A DNA stretch of 64,000 nt from Podarcis erhardii. Lineage: Eukaryota. The stretch is taken from NCBI GenBank assembly GCA_964252035.1, contig OZ176207.1. The stretch is one strand, 5' to 3'. Each line of letters starts with the position of its first letter. Position 1 is the stretch's first letter. The notes below the pieces were generated by a model. It had not been told where the DNA came from and did no database searches. It worked only from the letters and a program-made list of their open reading frames with translations. Both the position numbers and the translations under genes were made by a program. Positions 2,201-58,352 of this stretch are shown piece by piece.

Positions 2201-3609
2201 ACTCGCCCTGCTGTCACATTCACATGGAGGGAGATGTAAGCGAGTGGCAGTTGGCCAAGGGGCAGGCGAAGCGCTAACAGGGTGGACAGACAGCTGCAGC
2301 TGGCTATGGGTTAAAGTGGGGGCTGTAATCTGTGTTTGGGATTACATAACCAAGGAAAGGTTGCTATTTTAGATTCATTTAATAAGGGGATATAAGGGCC
2401 TGGACATAGGTATTTGGCTTTAGGGCAGCTGTGGCCAGCCCTTTGGGTATGTATGCACGGGGTCGAGGGCAAGGGATGGTCCTACTGCTACAGGGCACCC
2501 TGCAGAACATTGGCAGCTTCCCTGTCACTGGCTCTTCCATGCTGAGCTAGGCAATCGGCAAGACAATGTAGAGAGATGCAAGGTTTGCGGCTCCTCTTGT
2601 CACCTGGAAGCCACCTGTGCCTTCAGTTGGATATCTATAATGTCTCCATGGGAGGGGAAAACATCTGTAAACATTACAGATGCAGTACTTTGTAGTACTG
2701 CCACTGTGGCACAAAAAGAAGGATCTTCATAACTTATTTATAGAAGGTCTTCCCAAATCTTGCATTCATCTGTGTAGACTGCATGGTATAAATCAAGGAG
2801 CCAGCACTTTGTGACATCACTGAGGCACAAAAAATGGATCCCATATATTAAACTTTGTGGCTCTTATATTGACTTCACAACAAGCACAGATTCATAAGTT
2901 AATGACATTGCTATGGCACGAAAAGATGGTTGCAAGACACAAGTCCTTGTGCTTTTTACACAAAATTACCCCATTTCCACCATCAATCATAGTTCACATC
3001 AGTACCTATGGGCTTCGTTTTAATGATTATAAATTGCACCTTGTGGCGCAAAAACCTAGATGCTTCAGATGCATTTAATTTGTATCATGATGACACAGTA
3101 ACTCATAAAAATGAGTTTAATCATTTGTAGTGCACCGATGCTGGAACCTGATTTGTAGCACATCTTCTCATCATGTATCCTTTTTTAAATAGAATATTGA
3201 AATCCATTATATAATCACAGTTCGCCTACACTATCCAAAATAATTTTTCCAACATCATCTGGCTTTTTGCATAGGTCCTCATAGATCCTTGTAAGTTTTA
3301 CATGTATTCTTACATCAAACCATATCATACTGTATAGCCATAGCTTATCCCTTCAGCATGAAGAACACGAATTCAGTGTGTGCTCTGTGTGTAATCCACA
3401 TCACTGGATCAGAATACATTGTGTCCACATAGTTTTCCCATTTAAGTCCTATAAGTTATTAATTTTATTTTTAATAAAATAAGTATTTAAAAAAATGTAT
3501 CACAGTTATTTTTTTTACAGATAGGTAGCCGTGTTGGTCTGCCATGGTCAAAACAAAATAAAAAAATTCCTTCCAGTAGCACCTTAAAGACCAACTGAGT
3601 TAGTTATAG

Positions 3610-3647
3610 GTATGAGCTTTCGTGTGCATGCACACTTCTTCAGATAC
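3610..3647 (-). ncRNA. Minimal type I hammerhead ribozyme motif (PLE-associated)
   Basis: Reverse complement of 3661-3698. Confidence 0.7.
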
Positions 3648-3660
3648 ACTGGATACCAGT

Positions 3661-3698
3661 GTATCTGAAGAAGTGTGCATGCACACGAAAGCTCATAC
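3661..3698 (+). ncRNA. Minimal type I hammerhead ribozyme motif (PLE-associated)
   Basis: GUAU-CUGAAGA-A-GUGUGCAUGCACAC-GAAA-GC-UC-AUAC: core, stem II hairpin, palindromic AGCU stem III and 4-bp stem I. Predicted cleavage after C3694. Confidence 0.7.
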
Positions 3699-6600
3699 CT
3701 ATAACTAACTCAGTTGGTCTTTAAGGTGCTACTGGAAGGAATTTTTTTAAGTTATTTTTTTCTCAGCTTTCCCAAGCCTAGTACCTTCCTGATGTTTTGA
3801 ACTACAGCTCTCATCACTAGCCCCAGTCTGTAATCCAAAAACATCTGGAAGGCAGTAGCGTGGGGAAGGCTGAAGGCACTTCCTAAACTTATACTAATAT
3901 CAGATCACTGCATTGTAAAAATCACAATGCTAGTGAGTCTTTTCATTACTGTGTCACAAAAACTGGAATTTGGAAATGATACTTCCCAGACTGAATGATT
4001 TTTCCACAACAAATTATGCTTCAAATATCATAAAATATATAGTTCCAGCTCTTCCTAAACACACTTACCATTTGAAGCCTCTTAACTTCAAATACATTAA
4101 TATCATAACATTGTACCAGATGGTTGTAAAAAATGTTTACAGACAAGCTCAGATACGGTTCAATACAGTTATGCCCTGGAAACTGGTTATTTGAGAGACT
4201 AGCTGGTAAAATTGTTTTTTTTAATGCATTCAACACTACATAAAAATCTGTACCTCAGATTTAGGTTTTTATGATGCAGTATTAACTATTAGTATTGGCA
4301 CTCAGTGTAACACTTTCAAGGGTTAAAAGTGCTTCTGAAACAGGTTTTTTCCAATCTAGATTTTTGCCTCACAGTAGTTCCACGAATGTTACATCAATTC
4401 ATTTACTTTTTTAAAAAAAAAATGTTGCTCAACTTTGATCAGTGCCAATACGAAATGGTACAAGATGACATAAATTAATTTAAAAGCCATCAATAAAATA
4501 GATTACAAAATATCCTGCAAACAATGGTCACTAGAAACAGCTGGACAGAATCAGTTAAAACAGTAACTCATTAAAAACCTACAAAGCTAGAGTAAACATT
4601 TTGAAATGCAACCTGCTATTTCTGCTATGCCCAAAAGAAGATGTCACAAAGCACTGTGTTATTTGTATATTGTGAGTCTATGCAGATCACAAACTCTAAT
4701 TTGATAGTGGGTTGGAATTGAGGTCCTCCATGTAAAAGACATGAGGATCCATGATTAGAATCTTTGTGTTTGCACCACAATGGCAGTATAAAGTACTGGA
4801 TTCATGGTTTTATATTGCAGGCTGTGGACAAGGATGTGAGCGATTTGATGGCAGCTTTGCATGGCCTATAACAAAAATAAAATTAATTCAACAGACTCTA
4901 TTTATATTATGCTAGATCAAACTTTTTACTATCTGCTACCTGCCTAAAAGTCATGGTGGAGACATGTAGGAGAAAAAGACAAATAAGGTCCACTGTGACT
5001 GTGCTTAGATGAAGGTCCCCACCAGTGACCAGCACACGTCTACTATTTCTATTATTGCCAAAGCAGAAAGCTTTGTACCTAGTCCAGCTAGGAATAATTT
5101 GAACATGGAATACTTTCCTATGTAATATAATAATAAACAGCCGTGAAATAATTTGAAAATGTCTGTGTCCAGCTTAGAGTATATTGTCCAATATATGCAT
5201 TATTTGCATCTACTGTATTAGGGTCATTGATTAGCTAACATCCAATCCAGTTTCTCATTTCTTACCCCTTCTAATAAATCTAAACACTGTTTCAAATAAT
5301 TCAGCAGAATCTTATTATTGCTTGATTGAAATCCATGAAGTAAAGAACAATCACCCAAGGAACTATAGTAAATTAAGTTCTATAGCAGCTAGCTACTGGG
5401 TTGAAATGCTAGGGGCTTCTTTCAAAATGAGTTAGCACAACTTCAGAACTGGAGGAAACAACTAGATATATATCAGAGCAAACTGTCTTGGTGGCAAACA
5501 TGATAGTTTTCCATGACCAAGATCACATTTATTAAGATGTTTGTTTGTTTGTTTGTTTGTTTTACTTATATACTGTTTTATAGAGACTTTCAAAGTGACT
5601 TGCAACAGATTTGTACATACAATATAATCACATTCAAGGGTAGTATTAGCAATAGAAATACCTTGGTGTCCATATGGTACCAGGATTCTTCAGGCAGCAT
5701 TTCCCTGACTTCATCTTTGGTCTTCCATAGTGTTGCCAGGCAGCAAAGCCACATAGAGACTCTGATATAACAGAGTGGACCTCTGTCACTCAGTATATGG
5801 TGATTTCAAGTCTTCCTGTGTTGGCAGCATCTATGAGTAATTGGTTTGGGTTTTCCTTCTTCAGACTTCTGACAAGATTTTAAAAAAACTAGCTGGGAAT
5901 TGCCCACACACCTGAGCACACATCTATACTGACATACCAGCTACCTTTCATGTATTCTTTTGAAATTGAGAGAGAATTACAGTACTCTTTCCTCTGGCTC
6001 TTCAGCCGTTGGTCTGTGTCCAAGAAGAACAGATTCAAAACTGGTAGTTTCCCAAGTGAGCTGTGTCTGGTGTGGATTTCTTTATAAGAGAATTAAAACC
6101 TCCTTCTTGAGGGAAAATAGAACCTCTACCCTATCACAGCAATGAATGAACTGTATTCTCAACAAGTAGGATGGTCTTCCCAGAATATCATATTTTCCAA
6201 GGACTATGATACTCATTTCTTGGAAAAGACTATGTTCTCAAATTGAGTGTGGGATGAAATTGAAGCCAAGCAATTGCTGTCTGTTGAAAAAGCAGACTTG
6301 GTTTTCTTGGTGTATGGTCACTTCAGATAGACAAGGGAGAAGACGAATGAAACTGTTGCTTAACTAGCCCATTCCAACTAATAAAAAGTGATCTAGCTAT
6401 TACTAGACTGTGTGGGTCATGGTAGATGACTTTATTACCAGGTAACAATATAATTAACATCTAAGTGAGAAATTGATAGCTAGAGGCACAGGGTTCTTGA
6501 TCTCTTACTCCCAGTCTGAAGATAGCATCTTCTGGACGCTGTTTGTTGACCCAAAGCCAACCTGTATATCTATAAATAAAGAGGCTGTGACAAAACAAGT

Positions 6601-7104: not shown

Positions 7105-7830
7105 TATTCTAAGATCCCCACAGCTAAATAACGGTGCCTCTCTAAAAGCCACCTGAAACAGTTTTCTGAAAACATTAAGGAGGATCTAAATTCTACAAAG
7201 GATTTTTGCTCTGGGCTTCTTCCATTTTCTATTGATCTCACTGCTTTAGAATAAGAGTCAGCTGCGCTAGTTGAATGATCTTGGCAAAGTGATACTCAGA
7301 GTTTAATTTCCATAATGAGAGCTGCTTGGATTCTATAAATTTCAATTTCTCCCTTAGGAGTTCTTAGCTGAGTTGTGGTCACTAAATGATGTTTGAACTG
7401 TATTCTGCACGTGACATGGGGCATGCTTTACGGTATTTCATTATATTGTTGGGTATACGAAACAAAGCTCTAGTGAAGCTTCAGCTTAAATGAACCCCTT
7501 CAGCTGCTCACAACCAAATCCCCAACAACTTTCATGCCTATCAGTTTGAAAGAAATGATTTGCTAACATCTGGTTGGAATCAAACAGTGCAACTATCACC
7601 AGGTTGTCCCAAGTGCTAAAGAAAACACACAAGTGTTAAGAAATCAACCAGTATGGAATTTGGTTTTCAAATTTTAATTCTTAACAATTTAAAAGAACAC
7701 TTAATATAATTTAAGTATTTTAAATAAATACATAAATTATTGGAACCAAAGCAGCAACCACCCACCATCTCCACTTTTTCAAGTCTGCTTCAACTCACTG
7801 ATGCCTGCATGAACAACACCTAGGCCCTTT

Positions 7831-10089
7831 TTTGAGGGGAAAGAAGCACCTGATACGTGGAAAGAGGCTTATATCACGCTTATACCGAAGACAGAGACTG
7901 AAAAGACCCAACTTAAGAACTACCGTCCAATCTCTTTATTAAATGTGGATTACAAAATTTTTGCCGACATTTTAGCTAAGAGATTGAAAAAAGTTTTGAT
8001 GGGGGAGATTCATAGGGATCAATCGGGCTTCCTCCCGAGAAGACATTTATCAGATAATGTAAGGAACATAATAGACATTTTGGAAATGTTAGAAGTTAAT
8101 ATAAACACAAAAGCGGTTTTGATATTTGTGGACGCGGAGAAAGCCTTTGACAATATTTCTTGGACCTTTATGAAGAAGAATCTCCATGGGATGGGGGTAG
8201 GCCAAGGTTTTGAAAACGGTATAGGCGCAGTTTATTCTGAACAAAAAGCAAAGCTAATTGTAAATAATATTATTACAGAAGAACTTAAGATAGAAAAAGG
8301 GACACGTCAGGGGTGCCCAGTTTCCCCACTACTTTTTATTTTGGTCCTGGAGGTTTTGCTGAACATGATAAGAAAGGACCAGCTGGTTAAAGGGGTTCAG
8401 GTCGGAGCGAGACAATATAAATTGAGAGTATTCGCAGATGATTTGGTACTTACATTGCAAGAGCCGGAATCCAGTACGAAAAGGGTTTTGGAATTAATTC
8501 AGGAGTTTGGTCAAGTGGCAGGATTTAAATTAAATAAATCAAAGACTAAGGTATTAGAGAAAAATCTAACAGTAAGAGAGAAGGAGAGGTTTCAGAATGA
8601 AACAGGTTTAACAGTGGTTAAGAGTGTAAAATATTTGGGGATTAATATGACAGCTAAAAATATGAACTTATTTAAAGACAATTATGAGAAATGTTGGAAC
8701 CAAGTGAAAAAAGATTTAGAAATTTGGTCAAACTTGAAGCTTTCTTTGTCTGGTCGAATAGCAGCTATTAAGATGAATGTATTGCCTAGAATGTTATTTT
8801 TGTTTCAAACATTGCAAATTGTTGATAAGATGGAGTGTTTTAAGGGATGGCAGCGAGATATTTCTAAATTTATCTGGCAGGGCAAAAAGCCCAGAATAAA
8901 ATTTAAGATTTTAACTGATGCAAAGGAAAGGGGGGGATTTGCCCTGCCAGATTTGAAACTTTACTATGAATCAGCAGCTTTTTGCTGGTTGAAGGATTGG
9001 CTGCTCCTTAAGAACACAGACATTTTAGATTTGGAAGGTTTCAACAATTTTTTTGGGTGGCATGCATACTTGTGGTATGACAAAGTTAAGGTTCATAAAG
9101 GTTTTAAAAATCATATTGTCAGGAAAGCATTGTACAATGTTTGGATCAGATATAAAGACCTACTGGAGAGTAAAACTCCAAGGTGGCTTTCACCAATGGA
9201 GGCAAAAGCTGTGAAAAAACTCAATATGGAGTGTATATGGCCGAAATATTGGGAAATTTTAGAACAGGAGGGTAGTAACTTCAAACTGCAGAGTTTTGAG
9301 AAATTAAAGGACAAAGTGAGAGATTGGCTCCACTATTATCAAATAATGGAGGTTTATAAGATGGATAAGAAAATTGGTTTCCAGGTGGAGAAATCGAAAT
9401 TGGAAACAGAATTGTTAGAATCCAATACTAAAAATTTATCAAAAATGTATAACTTGCTGTTGAAATGGAATACGCAGGATGAAACAGTTAAATCAGTTAT
9501 GATTAAGTGGGCGCAAGATATTGGTCATAACATTATGTTTGCTGACTGGGAAAGGTTGTGGACCACCGGCATGAAATTTACGGCGTGTAACGCCTTGAGA
9601 GAAAATATTATGAAAATGATATATAGGTGGTACATGACCCCAGTCAAGCTTGCAAAAATTTACCACTTGTCAGACAACAAATGTTGGAAGTGTAAAGAAA
9701 ATGAAGGCTCATTCTTTCACCTCTGGTGGACATGCCCAAGGATTAAGGCTTTCTGGGAAATGATATATAATGAAATGAAAAAGATGTTTAAATACACTTT
9801 CCTGAAGAAACCAGAGGCCTTTCTCCTGGGTATGGTCAGCCATGTGGTGTTAAAGAAGGACAGAACTTTGTTTTTATATGCCACAACAGCAGCAAGGATC
9901 CTTATTGCAAAGTATTGGAAGACATCAGATCTACCCACTCTGGAAGAATGGCAGATGAAGATGACAGACTATATGGGACTTGCAGAGATGACGGGCAGAA
10001 TCCGAGACCAGGAGAAAGAGACAGTGGAAGAAGATTGGAAGAAATTTAAGGACTATCTTAATAAATATTACAAGATTAAAGAATGTTAG
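7831..10089 (+). CDS. L1 ORF2 remnant (RT plus C-terminal Cys/His motif), open from the truncation point to the stop; no start codon or endonuclease
   Basis: Motifs YRPISLLNVDYK, DAEKAFD, GTRQGCPVSPLLF, FADD, KYLG, CWKC...HLWWTC. The frame of ORF 7945..10089 stays open back to 7831. Confidence 0.85.
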   Translation, partial: FEGKEAPDTWKEAYITLIPKTETEKTQLKNYRPISLLNVDYKIFADILAKRLKKVLMGEIHRDQSGFLPRRHLSDNVRNIIDILEMLEVNINTKAVLIFVDAEKAFDNISWTFMKKNLHGMGVGQGFENGIGAVYSEQKAKLIVNNIITEELKIEKGTRQGCPVSPLLFILVLEVLLNMIRKDQLVKGVQVGARQYKLRVFADDLVLTLQEPESSTKRVLELIQEFGQVAGFKLNKSKTKVLEKNLTVREKERFQNETGLTVVKSVKYLGINMTAKNMNLFKDNYEKCWNQVKKDLEIWSNLKLSLSGRIAAIKMNVLPRMLFLFQTLQIVDKMECFKGWQRDISKFIWQGKKPRIKFKILTDAKERGGFALPDLKLYYESAAFCWLKDWLLLKNTDILDLEGFNNFFGWHAYLWYDKVKVHKGFKNHIVRKALYNVWIRYKDLLESKTPRWLSPMEAKAVKKLNMECIWPKYWEILEQEGSNFKLQSFEKLKDKVRDWLHYYQIMEVYKMDKKIGFQVEKSKLETELLESNTKNLSKMYNLLLKWNTQDETVKSVMIKWAQDIGHNIMFADWERLWTTGMKFTACNALRENIMKMIYRWYMTPVKLAKIYHLSDNKCWKCKENEGSFFHLWWTCPRIKAFWEMIYNEMKKMFKYTFLKKPEAFLLGMVSHVVLKKDRTLFLYATTAARILIAKYWKTSDLPTLEEWQMKMTDYMGLAEMTGRIRDQEKETVEEDWKKFKDYLNKYYKIKEC

Positions 10090-15902: not shown

Positions 15903-16631
15903 TCAAAACAAAATTTTTTTTCCTTCCAGTAGCACCTTAAAGACCAACTAAGTTAGTTCTTGGTATGAGCTTTCGTGTGCATGCACACTTCTTCAGATAC
16001 ACTGAAACAGAAGTCACCAGACCCTTCTATATAGTGAGAAGGTGGGAAGGGGTATTACTCAGAAGGGTGGTGGGATTGGGTGATTGGCAGATAGCTGTGA
16101 TGAGCCTGTTGACGACTCTTAACGACTGCAATAGGTCTTACAGGAAAAAGCAAGGGGTGAGAAGGTGAAAAATGGCTTTGTCATGTATAATGAGATAAGA
16201 ATCCAATGTCTTTGTTTAGACCAGGTCTCTCCATGGTTTTAAGTTTGGTAATAAGTTGCAATTCAGCAGCTTCTCTTTCCAGTCTATTTCTGAAATTCCT
16301 TTGTAATAGAACAGCTACTTTGAGATCTTGTATAGAATAAACGGACATAAATCTGACATCAGGAACCACAAGACAGAGAAACCAGTAGGAGAACACTTCA
16401 ATCTCCCAGGACATTCTATACAAGATCTCAAAGTAGCTGTTCTATTACAAAGGAATTTCAGAAATAGACTGGAAAGAGAAGCTGTTGAATTGCAACTTAT
16501 TACCAAACTTAAAACCATGGAGAGACCTGGTCTGAACAAAGACATTGGATTCTTATCTCATTATACATGACAAAGCCATTTTTCACCTTCTCACCCCTTG
16601 CTTTTTCCTGTAAGACCTATTGCAGTCGTTA
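15903..16631. mobile_element. Penelope-like element (Neptune-type) 3' fragment with inverted duplicate; encodes GIY-YIG endonuclease C-terminus on both strands
   Basis: RINGHKSDIR...PVGEHFNLPGHS...LEREAVELQLITKLKT...GLNKD on + (16334-16570) and mirrored on -. Inverted arms 16120-16338 and 16413-16631. Confidence 0.88.
15963..16000 (-). ncRNA. Minimal type I hammerhead ribozyme motif
   Basis: Identical to the 38-nt motif at 3661-3698, on the minus strand. Confidence 0.7.
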
Positions 16632-29960: not shown

Positions 29961-32900
29961 TGCACTATCATTAAATTATTAATCGCCTTTTAAACCACCA
30001 CCTCAAGGCAATTTACATAAAATTTAAAACACTTAAAAACACAAAAACAACAAATACTTTTAAAACAAGACTTAATCCCTAGCAAATGGAGACTTGTGGT
30101 AAAGACCCATTTATCCAGCTAGAAAAGTCCTATTTAGCCAAAGGAAATCTCCGCTTGCCAAGAAACATTTTGGAGCACATTTCAAGTCTGCCAACTGTTC
30201 CTTTGTAGTCAAATATTTATCTGCCTTATTTGCACACCTTATTTGCACCTTATTTGGGTGTGATGTGGGAGGAAACAGCCTTGTGGGCAAAGGCTTCTCA
30301 ATGCTGGCCTAAAGTGATCTCAGAAAAGCTACATTTTCTATATGCTACATGTCAAAGAATTCTATATTAAAAGAATCTTGCACCCAACCGAGAACTATGA
30401 AAATTATGGAGCTCCTTAGCAGTGGAACTTAATAACTTCCCTTCCAAAATGAAAAGGTTTGTGCAGGGAATGCATACACAGACACTTCAGTCACAGGATC
30501 TTAAAGATTATGCATTACCTTCTTCAATGCCGTTGATTGTCTCATGTCATATAGCACAATATTCCTGTCTGAAGCACAGCTTCCCAAAAGGTACATCTGA
30601 AAAATTAGTTGCATATCAAGTAATGTAAATATCGTCAAGCAAAAAACAAAACAAAAAAATTCTTAAATTGTTAAGTGCTAACTGAAAAAGGTATAATATA
30701 TACAGGTCTTGTTTAAACCAGCAGCTCTATCTTTTAAACAGTGTAATTTTCAGCGGCAGTACATAAGCTATCTTATTTAATCTACTGTTGCTAAAAAAGA
30801 AAAAGATAATGTGGAGGGGATAAAGCTCAAGACATTTCCCAGATCTCATGCTTTTAAACTGATTTTAAAACCTAGGAGAATCTAAAAGTAGTCTGAGTGG
30901 GTGGAAGGAATGACAGGGGAACTCTTAAAACTGCTCAGTGTGTGCAATGAGTGCAATCCTTGGATATGTATAGTTAACAGATGCCCTTTTTAGGGTTCAT
31001 GACCCCATCTTACTTTACAATTGGGAAATCTAATACTTTTCGTTTTAAACATCTCTACTTTTCCACCCAAGATTGTGTTCTGCTCCTTTTGCCTTTTCTG
31101 TGAACATCTACCCCCACTTCCTCACTGTCCATCAAGCCATTTCTCCCCTTCCAAAATCCTTCCTCAAAATCTACTTGCAAAAAGCACAGACAAGAAGGTC
31201 TGCTGTCGCCTGTGATTTCTGTGGTCTTTTCACCCTCCTCACTCATTATCTTCCTTCACCTTTAATTACTGAAGTTATCCTCCAACTCCTCTAAAAGGAT
31301 ATACAACTGCATTTTATACAGCGACGCTGACTATGTTGCTGGTACTAAAACATTTAGTGACAGTCCTTACAGTGGAATATATATAAATAAGTTGTTACCT
31401 CAATTGGATTGAATTTGACACTGCTTATGCTATCGACTCCCCACGTCAAAGAGCATAAAGGACTGGTTCTCTGTTCATCCCAGATATCAACTTGATGACC
31501 ACAAGTAGCAAAAACAGGATCCTTCCAATGGTGATCAATTCCAGTGTACACAGTCTTTAAAATGCAAATATAAAAAGCAGTACCAACAATGAATTGCTGG
31601 TTTTATACTCGGAGGGTTTTGTGCTTAGTGCCAATGCCAGGAACCGCAAGAGACATCTAAAACAGTCAGAGTAAGGGAGTCCTGCTTCAGCAACCATTGC
31701 TGAGCAGGATTTATTTCTTTTGAAGCCTCCTGTGACCCAGAAATTCAGCAGCGGAATAGCAGCTGGAACATCTGAAGTCAGGGTGGATGCTTGGAAACAC
31801 CCTTGCCTCATCGCCCTCTGGCATCGAGTGCCAACAGGTACAAGAGACAGCAGCAATCTTGATAAGGAAACCCAATCTCATGAGAGACCCTTAAGGTCTC
31901 AATTGTCTGTTTTATTTATTCAGACATTTTGCTAGTCATTTCCAGTAACTTTGGTTAGGAAGAACAGTACAGCATAGCTATTTTTTTAAAAAAATACAGT
32001 TAACCATGGGTACAGCTCTACAAGTACTTCAAAAGTTGCAACCATTTTTTCCCCATTTGTGTGCACAAGCTTTTTTTATCACATTTTCAATTAAAATCCC
32101 ACCAGAGGCAACAGGATAGCAAGTCACTATACCTGAGTGGACCTATTTTTAAAAAGCTAAATGGTAGCTTAATCCACTATCCAGAAATTTTTATTACGGA
32201 AATATCACACCTATTTGCTGAACTTTAAGGAAATGGGGTTAATTATCACTAGCATGAATATATGCAGCTGAATTCTACAACTTACTGCACCAGGGCACAA
32301 ATACACAAGAGGTATGGCAGGAAATTACAACCTGATTCTTCCTGCAGCCTTTTCAGTGGTCTTTCCATGCCTAAATCTCACCCTTAGTATTCTTCCAGAT
32401 ACTGGGTTGAAAACTCATCTTCCTGCTGAATTTTTGGTGGCTGACAAATGTGACAACTCACATTTATGGTATTTTATGCCAATTATGTAATTTATGATAA
32501 TTATTTTAATGATTTTGGTTAAGGTGTTTTATGCTTCTTTTCTCTCTTTTTTGTAAAACAACCCATGACCATTTTTGTTGAAGGCCAGTATAAAACTCTA
32601 ATAAATAAACTAACTCATACAGAGGCTTTGTACCAGCATTGCAAGGGCACTCAGCTTATGGGAATATTGTCCGATAACGGCATTCAGTGACACCTACAAC
32701 ATCTTTGACACTACAGATCGAAGGTCAATAGTTTTCTGCTCGTATTCAAGTAAAACAATACCTTCATCTGAATCTTTAAACACAGAAGGAAAGGGAGAGC
32801 AAAACAAGACAATGAATAAAGTAATACCTTTCCAAGAATCGTATTTAGTGGTTCTTCTGCTTCCCCATAAGCTGGCACCTCCATTTTCCAGTGCTTCACT

Positions 32901-35158
32901 GTTTTATCATCACCAACCTATTGATTTGGGAGAAAACATTGTATTCATAGTAAGAGAGTTACAATTCAGTCCTTCTGACGTTTATGTGAAACTAACAAGT
33001 GTGCATAGTCAATCTTAAATTTACTTCCTGGAGGAAGAACTGTGAGGGGAGAGACTTCATCAGGCAAGGCCTTCTTCCACCTGCCTTGCCCCACCCTCCA
33101 GTCTCTGCTTCTCAGTTTGTATTGTATTATTTTATGCACTGTGATTTGCCATTGTTTTATTGATTATAGTTCAGAAATTATTTATTATAATTGTTTAGAG
33201 TGGATTTCTGTTTAATTTTCATATGTGATATTTAATATTATTCTATACTATTCTAATGGATTGTTGAATATTACTTTATTTGATATAGGTTGCTTATTTT
33301 CAAGTTATGTTTTATTATCACATTTTTGTCTTGGATTAGATTGTTATAAGGTGTACATTCTTTGTTTCTTCAACCTGCAAACCACCTTGGGTATTGTAAA
33401 AATAGAAAGAAGGTACAGTATACAAATTAAAAGTGATGATAAACATGGTGCCAGATTGCATTTCTTCCAGACTGAATGACAAATTTCTCACATATATATA
33501 TACATATATATGCTTTCGTAGATTTTCACGGGTACAGGAATGCAGGTTTTGGTGTCCTCGGGTGTCTTCCCGTGTAAAAGTTGGGGTGTCTAGGCGACGT
33601 TTCGACGAGGTCTCACTCGTCATCTTCAGGCTGGTGCTTTCGGCTTCTTGTTACTGGAACAGAGCAGGATCTCAGTGTTTGAGTTCCTATAAATACTGTA
33701 GAGGGGGTGTGGTGTATAGCCTCCAATGTTCTGGGCAGAGAGGAAGTTCCCAGGCTAGTGTGCCTTTTCTTCTTTTGTTCCTTAATTACTTGAGAGATAT
33801 CCTGAGTGATTTCTTGAGTGATATCCTGAGTACCACTTAGGTGGGTCATTAGGTGTGGATTAGTTGTTAAAGTCTTTGTGTCTTGACCTCTTGAACTTTG
33901 TGAAGAGTTTTCCTGAGAAGATGGCTGTACTGTACTTAGTTGTGCTCTGGCTTGGCTTCGTGTATAGGGGCGAGCTGTGGTTTTGTGGCTTGTGTCAGCC
34001 AGATCTGTGTAGGGATTGCAGGGGGGTGCAGCATCCGGAGGTGCCACCATGGATTGGCTACTGGATGGTGTCTGTAATTCATCTGTGGAGAGGGTCTGGG
34101 TTTGGGTCTGGTGTGGTTGATTGGTGTTGGCGTTCTGTGTGCCTCTGGATCTGGTGTCAGTTTTTGTGGGGAGGGCTAATTTCCAGATGTCTGGCAAGCG
34201 GGATGTGTCGTCACGCTTGTTCATGTTGTGAGGGTGTTTCTCTATCTCGATGGCTTCCATGATTATTCTCTTGTGGTGATGTTCCGTGTTAAAGAGCAAT
34301 TTGGAATCTGCAAAATTAATTTCGTGTCCTGTTTCTTTCATGTGAAAAGAAAACATGAAAGAAACAGGACACGAAATTAATTTTGCAGATTCCAAATTGC
34401 TCTTTAACACGGAACATCACCACAAGAGAATAATCATGGAAGCCATCGAGATAGAGAAACACCCTCACAACATGAACAAGCGTGACGACACATCCCGCTT
34501 GCCAGACATCTGGAAATTAGCCCTCCCCACAAAAACTGACACCAGATCCAGAGGCACACAGAACGCCAACACCAATCAACCACACCAGACCCAAACCCAG
34601 ACCCTCTCCACAGATGAATTACAGACACCATCCAGTAGCCAATCCATGGTGGCACCTCCGGATGCTGCACCCCCCTGCAATCCCTACACAGATCTGGCTG
34701 ACACAAGCCACAAAACCACAGCTCGCCCCTATACACGAAGCCAAGCCAGAGCACAACTAAGTACAGTACAGCCATCTTCTCAGGAAAACTCTTCACAAAG
34801 TTCAAGAGGTCAAGACACAAAGACTTTAACAACTAATCCACACCTAATGACCCACCTAAGTGGTACTCAGGATATCACTCAAGAAATCACTCAGGATATC
34901 TCTCAAGTAATTAAGGAACAAAAGAAGAAAAGGCACACTAGCCTGGGAACTTCCTCTCTGCCCAGAACATTGGAGGCTATACACCACACCCCCTCTACAG
35001 TATTTATAGGAACTCAAACACTGAGATCCTGCTCTGTTCCAGTAACAAGAAGCCGAAAGCACCAGCCTGAAGATGACGAGTGAGACCTCATCGAAACGTC
35101 GCCTAGACACCCCAACTTTTACACGGGAAGACACCCGAGGACACCAAAACCTGCATAC

Positions 35159-35194
<36 letters not shown>

Positions 35195-38100
35195 CCCAGT
35201 CATTTACAACTTCCCCTTCCCTGGTTCCTTTAATTTTCCCATCCATCCCACCTATTCTTGTATATCCATTTAGCTCCCTTATTTCTTTATTATTCTTTTG
35301 TTTTGTATTATATTGTTGAATTTACCTTAATCCTACTAACGTTTGCACATGTTTACAGTTGCATCCAAATACTCCACAAAATTTTTCCATTCCTCTTTAT
35401 ATACTTGATTTTCTTGTTCTCTTATTTTACTTGTTAGACCCGCTAACTCTGCATATTTCGTCATTTTTAATTGCCAGATCTCCTTATTTGGGACCTCACT
35501 CACTGATTGTGAGTGACAAATCTATTGTTCTTCCAGCTGCATGCCTAAACATGTTTAAAGATCTATGGAAAAGGGCTATAAAAGCAACTGTATTTCTGTG
35601 AATAACATAGTGAACACTGCAAGTAAATGAAAAAGTAAATGAAAAAGAGTTATTAGCTCTAACAGTGTTGCAAATATTCCCGCACATCTATCCCAAGACT
35701 GAAAGCCAATGCAAGTACTCCAGTGGGACTTACTTTTGTCTAAATACAAATTGGATTAGGCTGCACAACAGGTATTAAAAAATACACATAAAATTATTTT
35801 AAGTCTCAGGTGTTTGTACTAAAGAGGGATTGTATTTAACTATGCTGAAGTACACTGCAAGGACTGCATTACTTTACTGAACTGTTTGCTAGAGGCAAAA
35901 GAATTACCTGTACTAAGTGACTGGACTTACAATAGTGACAGAGGATATTTAAATAAGAGGATATGTAAATCTATAGCTTTTTCAAACAAAGAACACATTT
36001 GCTCTTCAAACTCAAAGAAAGCAACAGATTTCTGAAATAGCAGGAGTGGTTTGAAGAATTGGCTTACCCCTGGGCTTGCTTTATGCTCCAAGAAAGTAGC
36101 ATTAGTATGGAAGAGTAAAACCTAAAGAGGTGGGAAACCTTCTTCTGTCTGCATGATCACATTCCGTCATGCTCAACTTTTTGGGTAAAGTCAGAGGCAA
36201 AAATGGGCATCATAACTCTCACCTTTGTACAAGAGGTTGCATTCCACCCACACAAAAGTCAAGAGATTTCTACGAAAACACTTCTACCTCCAGACAGGCA
36301 AAAGCTTTATTGCAGTTCAAAGAGATTTGAACCAGGCAAAAGCACTTAAGGAGAGTGGGGAGAGACCCAAGGGTCAGTGAAAGAAGGCTGGAAGGCTGCA
36401 TTTGACCCTTTCCCTGAGATTCCCTGCCCCTGAACTAGATAAAAAATAAGCTGCTGCAGTAGTAAGCGAGAGTTATAAAATAAAAGTACTTGATTCTATT
36501 ATTTAGAAAACAGAATGGGGGGAAAGTAACAAAGAAAAAGAAGTATACCAAGCACTTTAATATGCCTCCATAATTGCCAATATTATACTTACAGTGAAGA
36601 AAGATGTACCACAGAAACGGGTACACATTCCTCTCACAAAGCCCTCATGTGCCTGCAATGTACGGGTGCATTCACGCTTCATCAAGTTCCAAATTCTAAC
36701 CTATTGGAAACAAATAGCAGCATTGAACAATTCAGCATTAAAACTGTTTTTTGGAACAATATTACAAAACGGTGCGATGCCCTTTTGAAATCTAGAGATC
36801 AGGACAGTGTGATCACAACTTATGTGAAGTTTGTATTTCTGGGGGTTGCATGTAAAGGTAAAATCATTCAAAGTCAGAATGAGCCCCAGAACTGCCCAGC
36901 CACCCAACATCTCAGATGGCCCCACAATATATTGAGGGAGTCTCCAGAGCCCAGTAAACCCTTTACGGAAATAGCTTTTAAGCCCTCCATCTTGCTTGCT
37001 GGGCTCTGGGACAGTCACATGAGGACTCTGGAGATCTTGACTCCATGAGATCTTGGATGATTCCATATGATCTCGCGAGAGCATCCAGAGCCCAGTAAGC
37101 AAGGGTTTCCAGCCCCCTTTCTTCTTATTTGTTGGCAAATTGCATTAAGATCAGATCGAATAAGTAAAATTGGTGATCCTACTATAACATTATTTCAATA
37201 TTTCAGGTAGCAAAATACAGGAAGCTGCTCAATTGTGGATAGAAACCAGAAATTACTGACATGTATAAATAAAGATAATACAAGAGAACCAGGGAAGGGA
37301 GTGGGGGGAAGTCAAGGGATCTAAGTAATCCTAAAATATGAATTTATTATGGTGTGAATTTTTTTCTTTTTCATTTTTTCATTATCTTCTTTTTTGGTTT
37401 ATTTTCTCTTTTTATACTTGTGTGATGATAATGTTTAATTGTAAAAATCAATAAAAAATATTATTTTTAAAAAATTGTGGATAGAAACCAGACAAATAAA
37501 ACAGAGCATTTTGCCAGAGGAGCTTTGAATGACTTGTGTTAAACTGGTAGCTTTTAATTGGTGGTTCAGTTTTTAAGACAATGTTATAATTTAGCTTTTG
37601 AACAGGTCCCAATGGAGGTCAGTGGGATTTACTTCCTAGTACCTGTATATAGGATTGCAGGACTAGGCATCTTCCATGGCTATATCCACAGGCAACACCA
37701 ACTGAAACCAATCGAGTTACTGTTATACAATCCCTCATGCTATGATTGGATCATTACTTCCTGAAGTCACAGGCTTCCATCCTACTCTTCTCCCCAAATA
37801 CCTTGTCTCAAGAGGGAAGGAGAACATACACTAGGAAACAAGAGCAACAGTTAAAATATTCTTAATTGTTTCCATTAAAAAGGCCTTTTTCAGGGCATAG
37901 CACCTAAGCACTAAAACTGAGAGTGCAATCTTGCTCATAGTTATAGGCACACACATAACTGAAATGCAAGGTTCTATTTCTTGCAGAATTAAATAACCAC
38001 AGTAAAAACATGATCTGACACTTTATGGTTGTTGTTTTTATCCAATTATACATACCTCTCCATCACATGCTCCAGACAAAACTGTAGACAAGCTGTTTGG

Positions 38101-53223: not shown

Positions 53224-58352
<5,129 letters not shown>

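What the first reader, a model, noticed from the sequence alone, without database searches (positions are those of the whole stretch)
33540..35156. Near-perfect 1.6-kb palindrome (804-bp arms, 9-nt loop) inside DCAF13 intron 3
Seen: comparing the arms base by base, I found one mismatch (C33606 versus A35090, a CpG-type transition). Known: long perfect palindromes are recombinogenic, extrude cruciforms and are usually lost quickly. Long dsRNA is an ADAR and MDA5 substrate. DCAF13 is a conserved 18S rRNA processing factor. Inference: every pre-mRNA from this allele would carry an 800-bp duplex 0.6 kb from exon 4, so this is a very recent, probably polymorphic insertion that may affect splicing, editing or endo-siRNA output. 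The single mismatch argues mildly against a read fold-back artefact.
Basis: partly seen in the sequence, partly recalled or inferred. Interest (0 to 1): 0.8.

Follow-up and report, generated by a model that had tools for sequence, protein, structure and literature searches.

The report
Head-to-head Penelope retroelement insertion palindrome
The 1.6-kb palindrome in intron 3 of DCAF13 is real in the assembly, but it is the ordinary head-to-head double copy that Penelope-like retrotransposons leave when they insert, so it is a young repeat insertion and not a new kind of structure.

Summary
**Observation: confirmed.**
- The arms are 33540-34343 and 34353-35156 (804 nt each), with a 9-nt spacer.
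- There is one mismatch, C33606 against A35090, at a CpG.
- The palindrome lies in the 3.7-kb intron 3 of DCAF13 (minus strand), 622 nt from exon 4.

**What it is.** Each arm is the 3' 804 nt of a Penelope-like element (PLE), running from the centre outward. An arm holds:
- the last third of the GIY-YIG endonuclease;
- a long open C-terminal extension;
- a PLE-type minimal hammerhead motif;
- the element's 3' end.

**Insertion plan.** It matches the published PLE plan:
- a (TA)n target;
- a likely 10-13-nt target duplication;
- a 27-28-nt "tail" on one arm only;
- 5' truncation and head-to-head inversion.

Two other inverted PLE-type pairs lie in the same window, and a related family in another genome shows the same layout. 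This scan's unchecked notes list kb-scale PLE palindromes on other DNA of this genome.

**Age.** It is young. The arms differ at one site, the 242-codon frame is intact, and near-identical copies are very abundant in four read sets.

**Not tested.**
- Spanning reads: Logan contigs break at the flanking microsatellites.
- Whether the insertion is polymorphic.
- Any dsRNA, editing, siRNA or splicing effect.

**Verdict:** new member of a known kind, of modest interest.

The parts
33502..33511 (.). Left copy of the likely target-site duplication (ACATATATAT) within a (TA)n tract.
   Evidence: One search finds 10-13-nt direct repeats, at 33490-33511 on the left and starting at 35157 on the right. 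The exact length is ambiguous inside a microsatellite.
33512..33539 (-). 27-28-nt extension found only beside the left arm. This is the candidate PLE 'tail'.
   Evidence: In alignment A2 the left arm continues past the shared ...CCTGCAT terminus, whereas the right arm and both L001 copies run straight into (AT)n. The extension lies inside the candidate TSD. Published tails are 30-40 bp and sit at one end only (PMC8557442, PMC3846280, PMC11167929). I could not confirm it in other copies of this family.
33540..34343 (-). Left arm: the 3' 804 nt of a Penelope-like element, with its sense on the minus strand (the same sense as DCAF13).
   Evidence: The tblastn matches to PLE proteins are on the minus strand.
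34344..34352 (.). 9-nt spacer (GAAAAGAAA) at the inverted junction.
   Evidence: On the minus strand it is pyrimidine-rich, like the sequence upstream in a related family. This is only a weak hint that it belongs to the left copy.
34353..35156 (+). Right arm: the same 804 nt of the element, with its sense on the plus strand (antisense to DCAF13).
35157..35166 (.). Right copy of the likely target-site duplication, followed by (TA)n(CA)n.
34355..35083 (+). Open frame of 242 codons in the right arm: the C-terminal third of the GIY-YIG endonuclease plus an extension of about 190 aa. Its stop codon lies in hammerhead loop 2.
   Evidence: One search lists the ORF. phmmer found 96 relatives, including the 841-aa P0010, which carries RVT_1 and a homologous C-terminus. 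Alignments A1 and A3 place it, and 10 of 16 relatives hit Pfam GIY-YIG weakly.
33613..34341 (-). The mirror-image open frame in the left arm. The mechanical ORF runs on across the spacer to 34410.
35065..35102 (+). PLE-type minimal hammerhead motif in the right arm. Helix II is broken here by the A at 35090, which gives a C-A pair.
   Evidence: My dissection compared with the descriptor traits in PMC4209133. Rfam gives no match.
33594..33631 (-). PLE-type minimal hammerhead motif in the left arm, with helix II fully paired. It is in the sense of the DCAF13 transcript.
   Evidence: This 38-nt block is identical to the one in the related family L002, while the flanks are only about 70-80% alike.
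32918..36592 (-). DCAF13 intron 3, which hosts the insertion. The insertion is 1,645 of the intron's 3,675 nt.

Best explanation
**What it is.** The palindrome is one insertion of a young Penelope-like retroelement (PLE), with a Penelope/Poseidon-type endonuclease, into a (TA)n tract in DCAF13 intron 3. It was laid down as two 5'-truncated copies joined head to head. The element's 3' ends face outward and the truncated 5' ends meet at a 9-nt junction.

**Shown here.** Each arm is PLE sequence running from the centre outward. Both outer ends are the element's own terminus. One arm alone carries a 27-28-nt tail. The whole unit sits between short direct repeats.

**Inferred mechanism.**
1. The GIY-YIG endonuclease nicked the AT-rich target.
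2. Reverse transcription started at the tail-inclusive start site and made the cDNA of the left copy, about 813 nt plus the tail.
3. The nascent cDNA then served as the template for the second arm, by self-priming (snap-back) or a template switch onto itself.
4. That copying stopped at the element's usual 3' end, and the product was joined to the other side of a staggered break.

This would explain why the arms are equal to within 9 nt. It would also explain why the right copy appears to be contained within the left copy at the outer end (shown) and perhaps at the inner end (a weak hint).

**Function.** The structure is a by-product of insertion with no selected role. As a side effect, every DCAF13 pre-mRNA can fold into an 804-bp intronic duplex (predicted, not observed).
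For: **Each arm is PLE sequence**
- The arm ORF has 96 relatives. P0010 (841 aa) carries Pfam RVT_1 plus a C-terminus homologous to the arm.
- The relatives show GVY..YIG with two cysteines in the core, two histidines, and the R/E/N block that the arm retains. Ten of 16 hit Pfam GIY-YIG, best E 9e-5.
- The CX2-5CxxC linker is absent in 8 of 9 relatives. The one match, in P0007, lies inside the GIY-YIG core and not in the linker.

**Hammerhead**
- The motif has every trait listed for PLE minimal hammerheads: CUGANGA, an unpaired base after position 9, a G10.1-C11.1 pair, a 6-bp helix II, a 2-bp helix I and a palindromic CG in helix III (against PMC4209133).
- It is the best-conserved block between families.

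**Architecture**
- Outer ends: contigs from four runs end the element at 33540 and continue into (AT)n (table 7).
- The tail is on one arm only, and the TSD is 10-13 nt.
- The same plan is seen at 3516-3749 in this window, with a 12-nt TSD, a 42-nt one-sided extension and a 3-nt spacer.
- An inverted PLE-endonuclease pair lies at 16120-16631 (hhalign 87%).
- A related family in GCA_029282475.1 also has a short inverted copy beside a longer forward copy in (AT)n.

**Literature**
- An inverted 5'-truncated copy, a one-sided 30-40-bp tail and a microsatellite bias are described in PMC8557442.
- Head-to-head inverted repeats with junction palindromes are read as self-priming, with 8-10-bp TSDs and a 31-bp tail, in PMC3846280.
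- The Anolis PLE protein cleaves and extends both strands at AT-rich DNA, and its two reverse-transcription start sites define the tail (PMC11167929).
Against: - No read or contig spans the locus, so the assembly has not been checked independently.
- Rfam finds no hammerhead, even at E up to 10.
- Pfam finds nothing on the arm ORF itself, so membership rests on homologues.
- The tail was not confirmed in other copies of this family.
- The TSD is ambiguous inside a microsatellite.
- The self-priming step is an inference from symmetry. In vitro the Anolis enzyme extends both strands (PMC11167929), which could also give inverted pairs. The unequal pairs at 16120-16631 and in L001 fit either route.
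Confidence: 0.85

Rival explanations
1. Twin target-primed reverse transcription. Both strands of the target were nicked and each primed its own cDNA from PLE RNA. The two cDNAs were then joined in the middle, without any self-copying.
For: [quoted passage not shown] That would naturally give one arm with a tail and one without.
- The unequal pairs (219 and 293 nt at 16120-16631; about 245 and 970 nt in L001) are easy to explain this way.
Against: - Two independent cDNAs should not stop within 9 nt of each other at about 810 nt.
- The same near-symmetry is seen at 3550-3758, with a 3-nt spacer.
- Unchecked scan notes report kb-scale PLE palindromes with 1-nt spacers elsewhere in this genome.
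Confidence: 0.3
2. Assembly artefact: a fold-back or chimeric long read, or a mis-join, doubled a single 5'-truncated PLE copy.
For: - No spanning molecule was seen.
- PLE tandem and inverted structures are known to cause trouble for assemblies (PMC8557442).
Against: - A fold-back read would invert the flank too. Here the two flanks are different, non-complementary host sequence that continues the intron on both sides.
- Both outer boundaries fall exactly at the element's terminus.
- The arms differ in the tail and at one CpG site.
- The unit is framed by a direct repeat.
- The same layout recurs in the window and in another assembly.
Confidence: 0.04
3. Later inverted duplication: a solo PLE copy was duplicated in inverted orientation after insertion, by a replication template switch or by hairpin-capped break repair.
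For: Such events do create short-spacer palindromes in eukaryotes (established knowledge).
Against: - The duplicated block would have to begin exactly at the element's terminus and include no host flank.
- The repeated occurrence of the same layout for different PLE families argues for an origin at insertion.
Confidence: 0.04
4. Retained functional hairpin: the intronic inverted repeat is kept because its dsRNA feeds small-RNA silencing of the PLE family or tunes DCAF13.
For: - The host transcript is predicted to fold into a near-complete duplex, with 99% of bases paired and an MFE of -1683 kcal/mol.
Against: - No RNA evidence was obtained.
- The insertion is too young for conservation to say anything.
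- The layout is fully explained as a by-product of insertion.
Confidence: 0.07

Closest known systems
Head-to-head inverted pLTR / inverted 5'-truncated copy structures of endonuclease-containing Penelope-like elements (Arkhipova et al. 2013, PMC3846280; Craig et al. 2021, PMC8557442)
   Same: - A head-to-head inverted repeat with a short junction.
- 5' truncation.
- A one-sided tail of about 30 bp.
- A TSD of about 10 bp.
- A (TA)n/AT-rich target.
- A hammerhead motif near the 3' end.
   Different: - This insertion consists only of two equal truncated copies with no full-length body.
- The arms are long (804 nt) and the spacer is only 9 nt.
- It sits in an intron of an essential gene.
PAc (Poseidon of Anolis carolinensis) in vitro system (Frangieh et al. 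2024, PMC11167929)
   Same: - A squamate PLE.
- An AT-rich target.
- A tail explained by two RT start sites.
- Both target strands can be cleaved and extended.
   Different: - This is a different family. Here the hammerhead overlaps the end of the ORF, whereas in PAc the ORF start lies near it.
- No biochemistry exists for this family.
Inverted Penelope copies that give siRNAs in transformed Drosophila melanogaster (Evgen'ev 2013, PMC3681739)
   Same: Rearranged PLE copies with long inverted repeats that can form dsRNA.
   Different: - That case is an insect with a robust endo-siRNA pathway and has small-RNA data.
- This is a lizard intron with no RNA data.
L1 twin-priming inversions
   Same: Use of the second target strand during target-primed reverse transcription, giving inverted segments.
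   Different: - In L1 the two parts copy different portions of one RNA, so no palindrome results.
- Here both arms copy the same 3' region.

Membership tests
Penelope-like elements (EN+ PLE) | PLE-type reverse transcriptase | tested here: inconclusive
   The RT is absent from this 5'-truncated copy. The homologue P0010 (841 aa, 50% identical over the shared endonuclease part) carries Pfam RVT_1 at E=2e-14 upstream of the homologous C-terminus. I did not make an RT phylogeny.
Penelope-like elements (EN+ PLE) | C-terminal GIY-YIG endonuclease with the CCHH motif and R, H, E, N residues | tested here: met
   The arm keeps the last third of the domain (TGHEINF ... RIIMEAIEIEKHP..N.RDD). Aligned relatives supply the GVY..YIG core with two Cys and two His. 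Ten of 16 relatives hit Pfam PF01541, best E 9e-5 and below the gathering score. The arm ORF alone gives no Pfam hit.
Penelope-like elements (EN+ PLE) | Insertion architecture: 5' truncation, direct or inverted repeats, one-sided 30-40-bp tail, short TSD, AT-rich/microsatellite target | tested here: met
   (table 7), compared with PMC8557442, PMC3846280 and PMC11167929. The tail here is 27-28 nt, and it was not confirmed in other copies of this family.
Penelope/Poseidon clade of PLEs | No CX2-5CxxC zinc-finger-like linker upstream of GIY-YIG | tested here: inconclusive
   A regular-expression search found no linker motif in 8 of 9 relatives, including the full-length P0010. The one match, in P0007, lies inside the core. 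The test was made on relatives and not on this copy, and without a phylogeny.
Hammerhead ribozyme (Rfam Hammerhead families) | Match to a curated covariance model | tested here: not met
   No hammerhead family matched at E up to 1 over 2.7 kb or at E up to 10 over 161 nt.
PLE minimal hammerhead (Cervera & de la Pena 2014) | CUGANGA core; unpaired base between positions 9 and 10.1; G10.1-C11.1 pair; long helix II; short helix I; GAAA; palindromic 1-bp helix III and loop; H17 | tested here: met
   The left arm reads CUGAAGA-U-GACGAG-UGAGAC-CUCGUC-GAAA-CG-U-C, with 2-bp GC/GC for helix I. In the right arm one helix II pair is broken. Self-cleavage was not tested, and published motifs of this kind need dimers and are weak in vitro (PMC4209133).
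microRNA precursors (mir-548, mir-3910 and others) | Score at or above the Rfam gathering threshold | tested here: not met
   mir-548 scores 65 bits against a gathering score of 90, on both strands at the palindrome centre. Any perfect hairpin would produce such a match.
hpRNA / endo-siRNA locus | Small RNAs or editing that map to the duplex | not testable with these tools
   Reads were laid on DNA-type contig runs. The arms are a high-copy repeat, so RNA contigs could not be assigned to this locus.

The most novel reading that the evidence does not exclude
Because DCAF13 is a housekeeping gene, this insertion would act as a constitutively transcribed 804-bp hairpin RNA in a vertebrate. Its antisense arm is transcribed first and its sense arm, with the hammerhead, second. 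It could therefore be a standing source of dsRNA (Dicer products, ADAR editing, innate sensing) directed at a currently abundant PLE family. Together with the other kb-scale PLE palindromes noted in this genome, it would also be a natural test of how long short-spacer palindromes survive in a vertebrate germ line.
Probability: 0.1. Interest if true: 0.6.

Novelty: new member of a known kind. Interest (0 to 1): 0.3.

Why it matters
- **Annotation.** An alarming-looking structure in an essential gene turns out to be an ordinary transposon insertion. Similar palindromes in this genome should be read as PLE products before anything else.
- **PLE mechanism.** This is a clean, young example. The arms are equal to within 9 nt, the tail is on one arm only, and a TSD frames the unit. 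These features constrain models of how PLEs make inverted copies, in particular self-priming against two-strand priming, a point the literature leaves open.
- **If the hairpin is expressed and processed.** It would be a vertebrate case of a gene-embedded dsRNA source against an active retroelement family. It would also help to measure how well long short-spacer palindromes are tolerated.

Tried and rejected
- **Rfam.** The scan of 33000-35700 at E up to 1 and of 35000-35160 at E up to 10 found no hammerhead. It gave only sub-threshold microRNA-model hits, which are caused by the perfect hairpin. I rejected these as spurious.
- **Pfam on the arm ORF.** Nothing was found. A profile of endonuclease relatives against PDB sequences also found nothing at E up to 1.
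- **Exact-protein look-ups.** Look-ups of the two window ORFs and of P0001 were not on record. I therefore could not fetch a second assembly of this locus.
- **Read laying on four runs.**
  - The arms have word depths of about 1e5, against about 10-200 in unique flank.
  - Contigs end at the (TA)n/(CA)n tracts and no piece bridges a junction.
  - Presence, absence, coverage halving and polymorphism therefore could not be judged.
  - The many 'skips' listed inside the arms come from other copies of the repeat and say nothing about this locus.
- **Does the spacer belong to one copy?** A comparison with a related family at about 71% identity gives only a weak hint in favour of the left copy.
- **Foldback or MITE-type DNA transposon.** Rejected, because the arms are retroelement coding sequence with the 3' ends facing outward.
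- **Pfam on the peptide at 16328-16567.** Nothing was found. Only the profile comparison supports a PLE endonuclease there.

Full report
**1.

- The repeat finder reports a single inverted pair at 33533-34343 and 34353-35163 with 9 nt between the arms.
- Walking outward from the centre, the two sides are perfectly complementary from offset 5 to 808, except at offset 742 (C33606 against A35090).
- The arms are therefore 33540-34343 and 34353-35156, 804 nt each, around the spacer GAAAAGAAA at 34344-34352.
- The mismatch is CG in the left arm against TG on the matching strand of the right arm.
- Beyond the arms the flanks are unrelated to each other.

**2. The gene context holds**

- The minus-strand stretch 38056-38256 matches human DCAF13 residues 24-90 (PDB 7mq8 chain LU, E=4e-38) and yeast Sof1.
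- Exon 1 (MKVKVLSRNP...) lies near 39.8 kb. Exon 3 is 36593-36700 and exon 4 is 32828-32917, with AG and GT boundaries.
- Intron 3 is 32918-36592 (3,675 nt). The insertion fills 45% of it and ends 622 nt from the exon 4 acceptor.
- DCAF13 is on the minus strand. The pre-mRNA therefore carries the right arm (antisense to the element) first and the left arm (element sense) second.

**3. What the arms are**

*Coding content*
- Each arm holds a 242-codon open frame running from the centre outward. The other two frames are full of stops.
- Pfam sees nothing in this frame.
- phmmer against 1.8 billion representatives finds 96 relatives. P0010 (841 aa) has Pfam RVT_1 followed by a C-terminus homologous to the arm.
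- Alignments of the relatives show GVYEIPC..C...YIGQTNRR..R..EH......H...TGH.I.F......RIIREAIEIEK.P...N.RDD. That is a GIY-YIG core with two cysteines, two histidines and the catalytic R/E/N block. Craig et al. give this pattern for canonical EN+ Penelope-like elements (PMC8557442).
- Ten of 16 relatives hit Pfam GIY-YIG weakly.
- The arm begins at TGHEINF, so it keeps only the last third of the endonuclease.
- No CX2-5CxxC linker was found in the relatives. This suggests the Penelope/Poseidon type, although I made no phylogeny.
- The frame then runs about 190 codons further and ends in ...QPEDDE-stop. P0002, from a different family, shares this extension and the same ending.

*Hammerhead motif*
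- Ninety nt from the element's 3' end lies CUGAAGA-U-GACGAG-UGAGAC-CUCGUC-GAAA-CG-U-C.
- Rfam does not recognise it.
- It nevertheless has each trait that Cervera and de la Pena list for PLE minimal hammerheads (PMC4209133):
  - the unpaired base between positions 9 and 10.1;
  - the G10.1-C11.1 pair;
  - a long helix II and a very short helix I;
  - a palindromic insert in a 1-bp helix III.
- The 38-nt block is identical in the related family L002, while the surrounding sequence is about 70-80% alike.
- The single arm-to-arm mismatch falls in helix II. The relatives carry G there, so the A at 35090 is the derived state, a CpG-type change after insertion.
- The microRNA-model hits at the centre are below threshold, occur on both strands, and are what any perfect hairpin gives.

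**4. Insertion anatomy**

| Feature | Window coordinates | Evidence |
|---|---|---|
| Left TSD candidate (ACATATATAT) | 33502-33511 | |
| One-sided extension ("tail") | 33512-33539 | |
| Left arm (element sense on minus strand) | 33540-34343 | |
| Spacer | 34344-34352 | |
| Right arm (element sense on plus strand) | 34353-35156 | |
| Right TSD candidate | 35157-35166 | |

- Both outer ends are the element's 3' terminus (...CCTGCAT).
- In all four runs laid, contigs that carry this end continue into (AT)n (table 7). The same holds for both copies in L001. The family therefore ends there and targets TA microsatellites.
- The right arm abuts (TA)n(CA)n directly. The left arm is followed by 27-28 extra nt before the (TA)n tract.
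- Direct repeats of 10-13 nt frame the unit including that extension, although a microsatellite makes the exact TSD uncertain.
- This is the published PLE plan:
  - An inverted 5'-truncated copy, a 30-40-bp tail at one end and a microsatellite bias are described in PMC8557442.
  - A 31-bp tail on one of the inverted repeats, 8-10-bp TSDs and head-to-head as the commonest arrangement are described in PMC3846280.
  - The tail is explained by two reverse-transcription start sites, and AT-rich targets are cut on both strands, in PMC11167929.

**5. It is not a one-off**

- The window holds two more inverted pairs.
  - At 3516-3749 a different hammerhead-bearing family forms 103-nt arms with a 3-nt spacer, a 42-nt one-sided extension and a clean 12-nt TSD.
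  - At 16120-16631 a 219-nt inverted copy abuts a 293-nt forward copy. The peptide it encodes matches the PLE endonuclease profile (hhalign 87%, E=4.5e-6).
- A related family in GCA_029282475.1 has a short inverted copy next to a longer forward copy in (AT)n.
- Unchecked notes of this scan list many PLE palindromes on other DNA of this genome, some of 2-2.5 kb with 1-nt spacers. I use them as leads only.

**6. Mechanism**

- Shown: the structure is a PLE head-to-head pair with the anatomy described above.
- Inferred: the arms were made in one event and the second arm was copied from the first.
- The reasons for the inference are:
  - Two independent cDNAs should not stop within 9 nt of each other at about 810 nt. 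The pair at 3.5 kb is just as symmetric.
  - The right copy lacks the tail that the left copy has. The spacer weakly resembles the left copy's upstream sequence. The right copy therefore looks nested within the left.
- Arkhipova et al. drew the same self-priming inference from junction palindromes (PMC3846280).
- The rival is independent priming on both nicked strands, which the Anolis enzyme can do in vitro (PMC11167929). That route explains the one-sided tail and the unequal pairs well, but not the symmetry.
- I put self-priming ahead of twin priming at roughly 55 to 30.

**7. Age**

- The arms differ at one of 804 sites, and that site is a CpG.
- The frame is intact.
- About half of the repeat contigs laid from the best run are at least 99% alike, and the family reaches word depths of about 1e5 in four organisms.
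- If the arms were identical at insertion and have not converted each other, the divergence of 0.12% implies an age of the order of 1e5 to 1e6 years at typical squamate rates. Those rates are my own knowledge and were not looked up.
- Polymorphism was not tested.

**8. Artefact?**

- No molecule spanning the locus could be examined. The runs are Logan contigs that stop at the flanking microsatellites.
- Several arguments weigh against an artefact:
  - The flanks are different host sequence on each side.
  - The boundaries fall exactly at the element's terminus.
  - The arms differ by the tail and by one base.
  - A direct repeat frames the unit.
  - The layout recurs in this window and in another assembly.
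- I put an artefact at about 4%.

**9. Consequences**

- The minus-strand transcript of 33540-35156 is predicted to pair over 99% of its length (MFE -1683 kcal/mol).
- The host-sense hammerhead is a single minimal motif that would be buried in the duplex. Published motifs of this kind need dimers and are weak (PMC4209133), so I do not expect it to cleave the pre-mRNA.

**10. Verdict**

The structure is real, young and striking, and it is fully accounted for by known PLE biology. It is a new member of a known kind.

Noticed in passing
window 3504-3761: A second PLE-type palindrome from a different hammerhead-bearing family. It has 103-nt arms, a 3-nt spacer, a 42-nt extension on the left arm only and a clean 12-nt TSD (AGTTATTTTTTT).
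   Followed up: partly
window 16120-16631: An unequal head-to-head pair: a 219-nt inverted copy abuts a 293-nt forward copy. The encoded peptide matches the PLE endonuclease profile (hhalign 87%), but Pfam is silent. No clear TSD was found.
   Followed up: partly
window 34355-35083 and locus L002 59-730: The element's frame stays open for about 190 codons beyond the endonuclease and ends in QPEDDE-stop, inside hammerhead loop 2. A related family keeps the same ending, so the ribozyme core and the ORF end overlap.
   Followed up: partly
protein P0001 (268 aa; no contig on record): A predicted protein joins a Translin-family domain to 105 residues that are 93% identical to the C-terminal extension of this element. 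This is probably a gene model that has taken in a PLE fragment.
   Followed up: no
window 33008-33430: Another very high-copy repeat lies in the same intron, between the palindrome and exon 4. Its word depth is about 1e5 in all four runs, and it shows many shared variant sites.
   Followed up: no
window 7813-10086 (+): A 758-aa open frame that looks like a LINE reverse transcriptase.
   Followed up: no
window 55481-55777 (-): An open stretch with a collagen-like G-x-y run followed by a cysteine-containing C-terminus. From memory it resembles CTHRC1. I did not check this.
   Followed up: no
locus L001 4397-5749 (GCA_029282475.1): A related PLE family is inserted in a long (AT)n tract as a short inverted copy next to a longer forward copy. 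The arms are 99% complementary, and the hammerhead blocks carry small deletions.
   Followed up: partly
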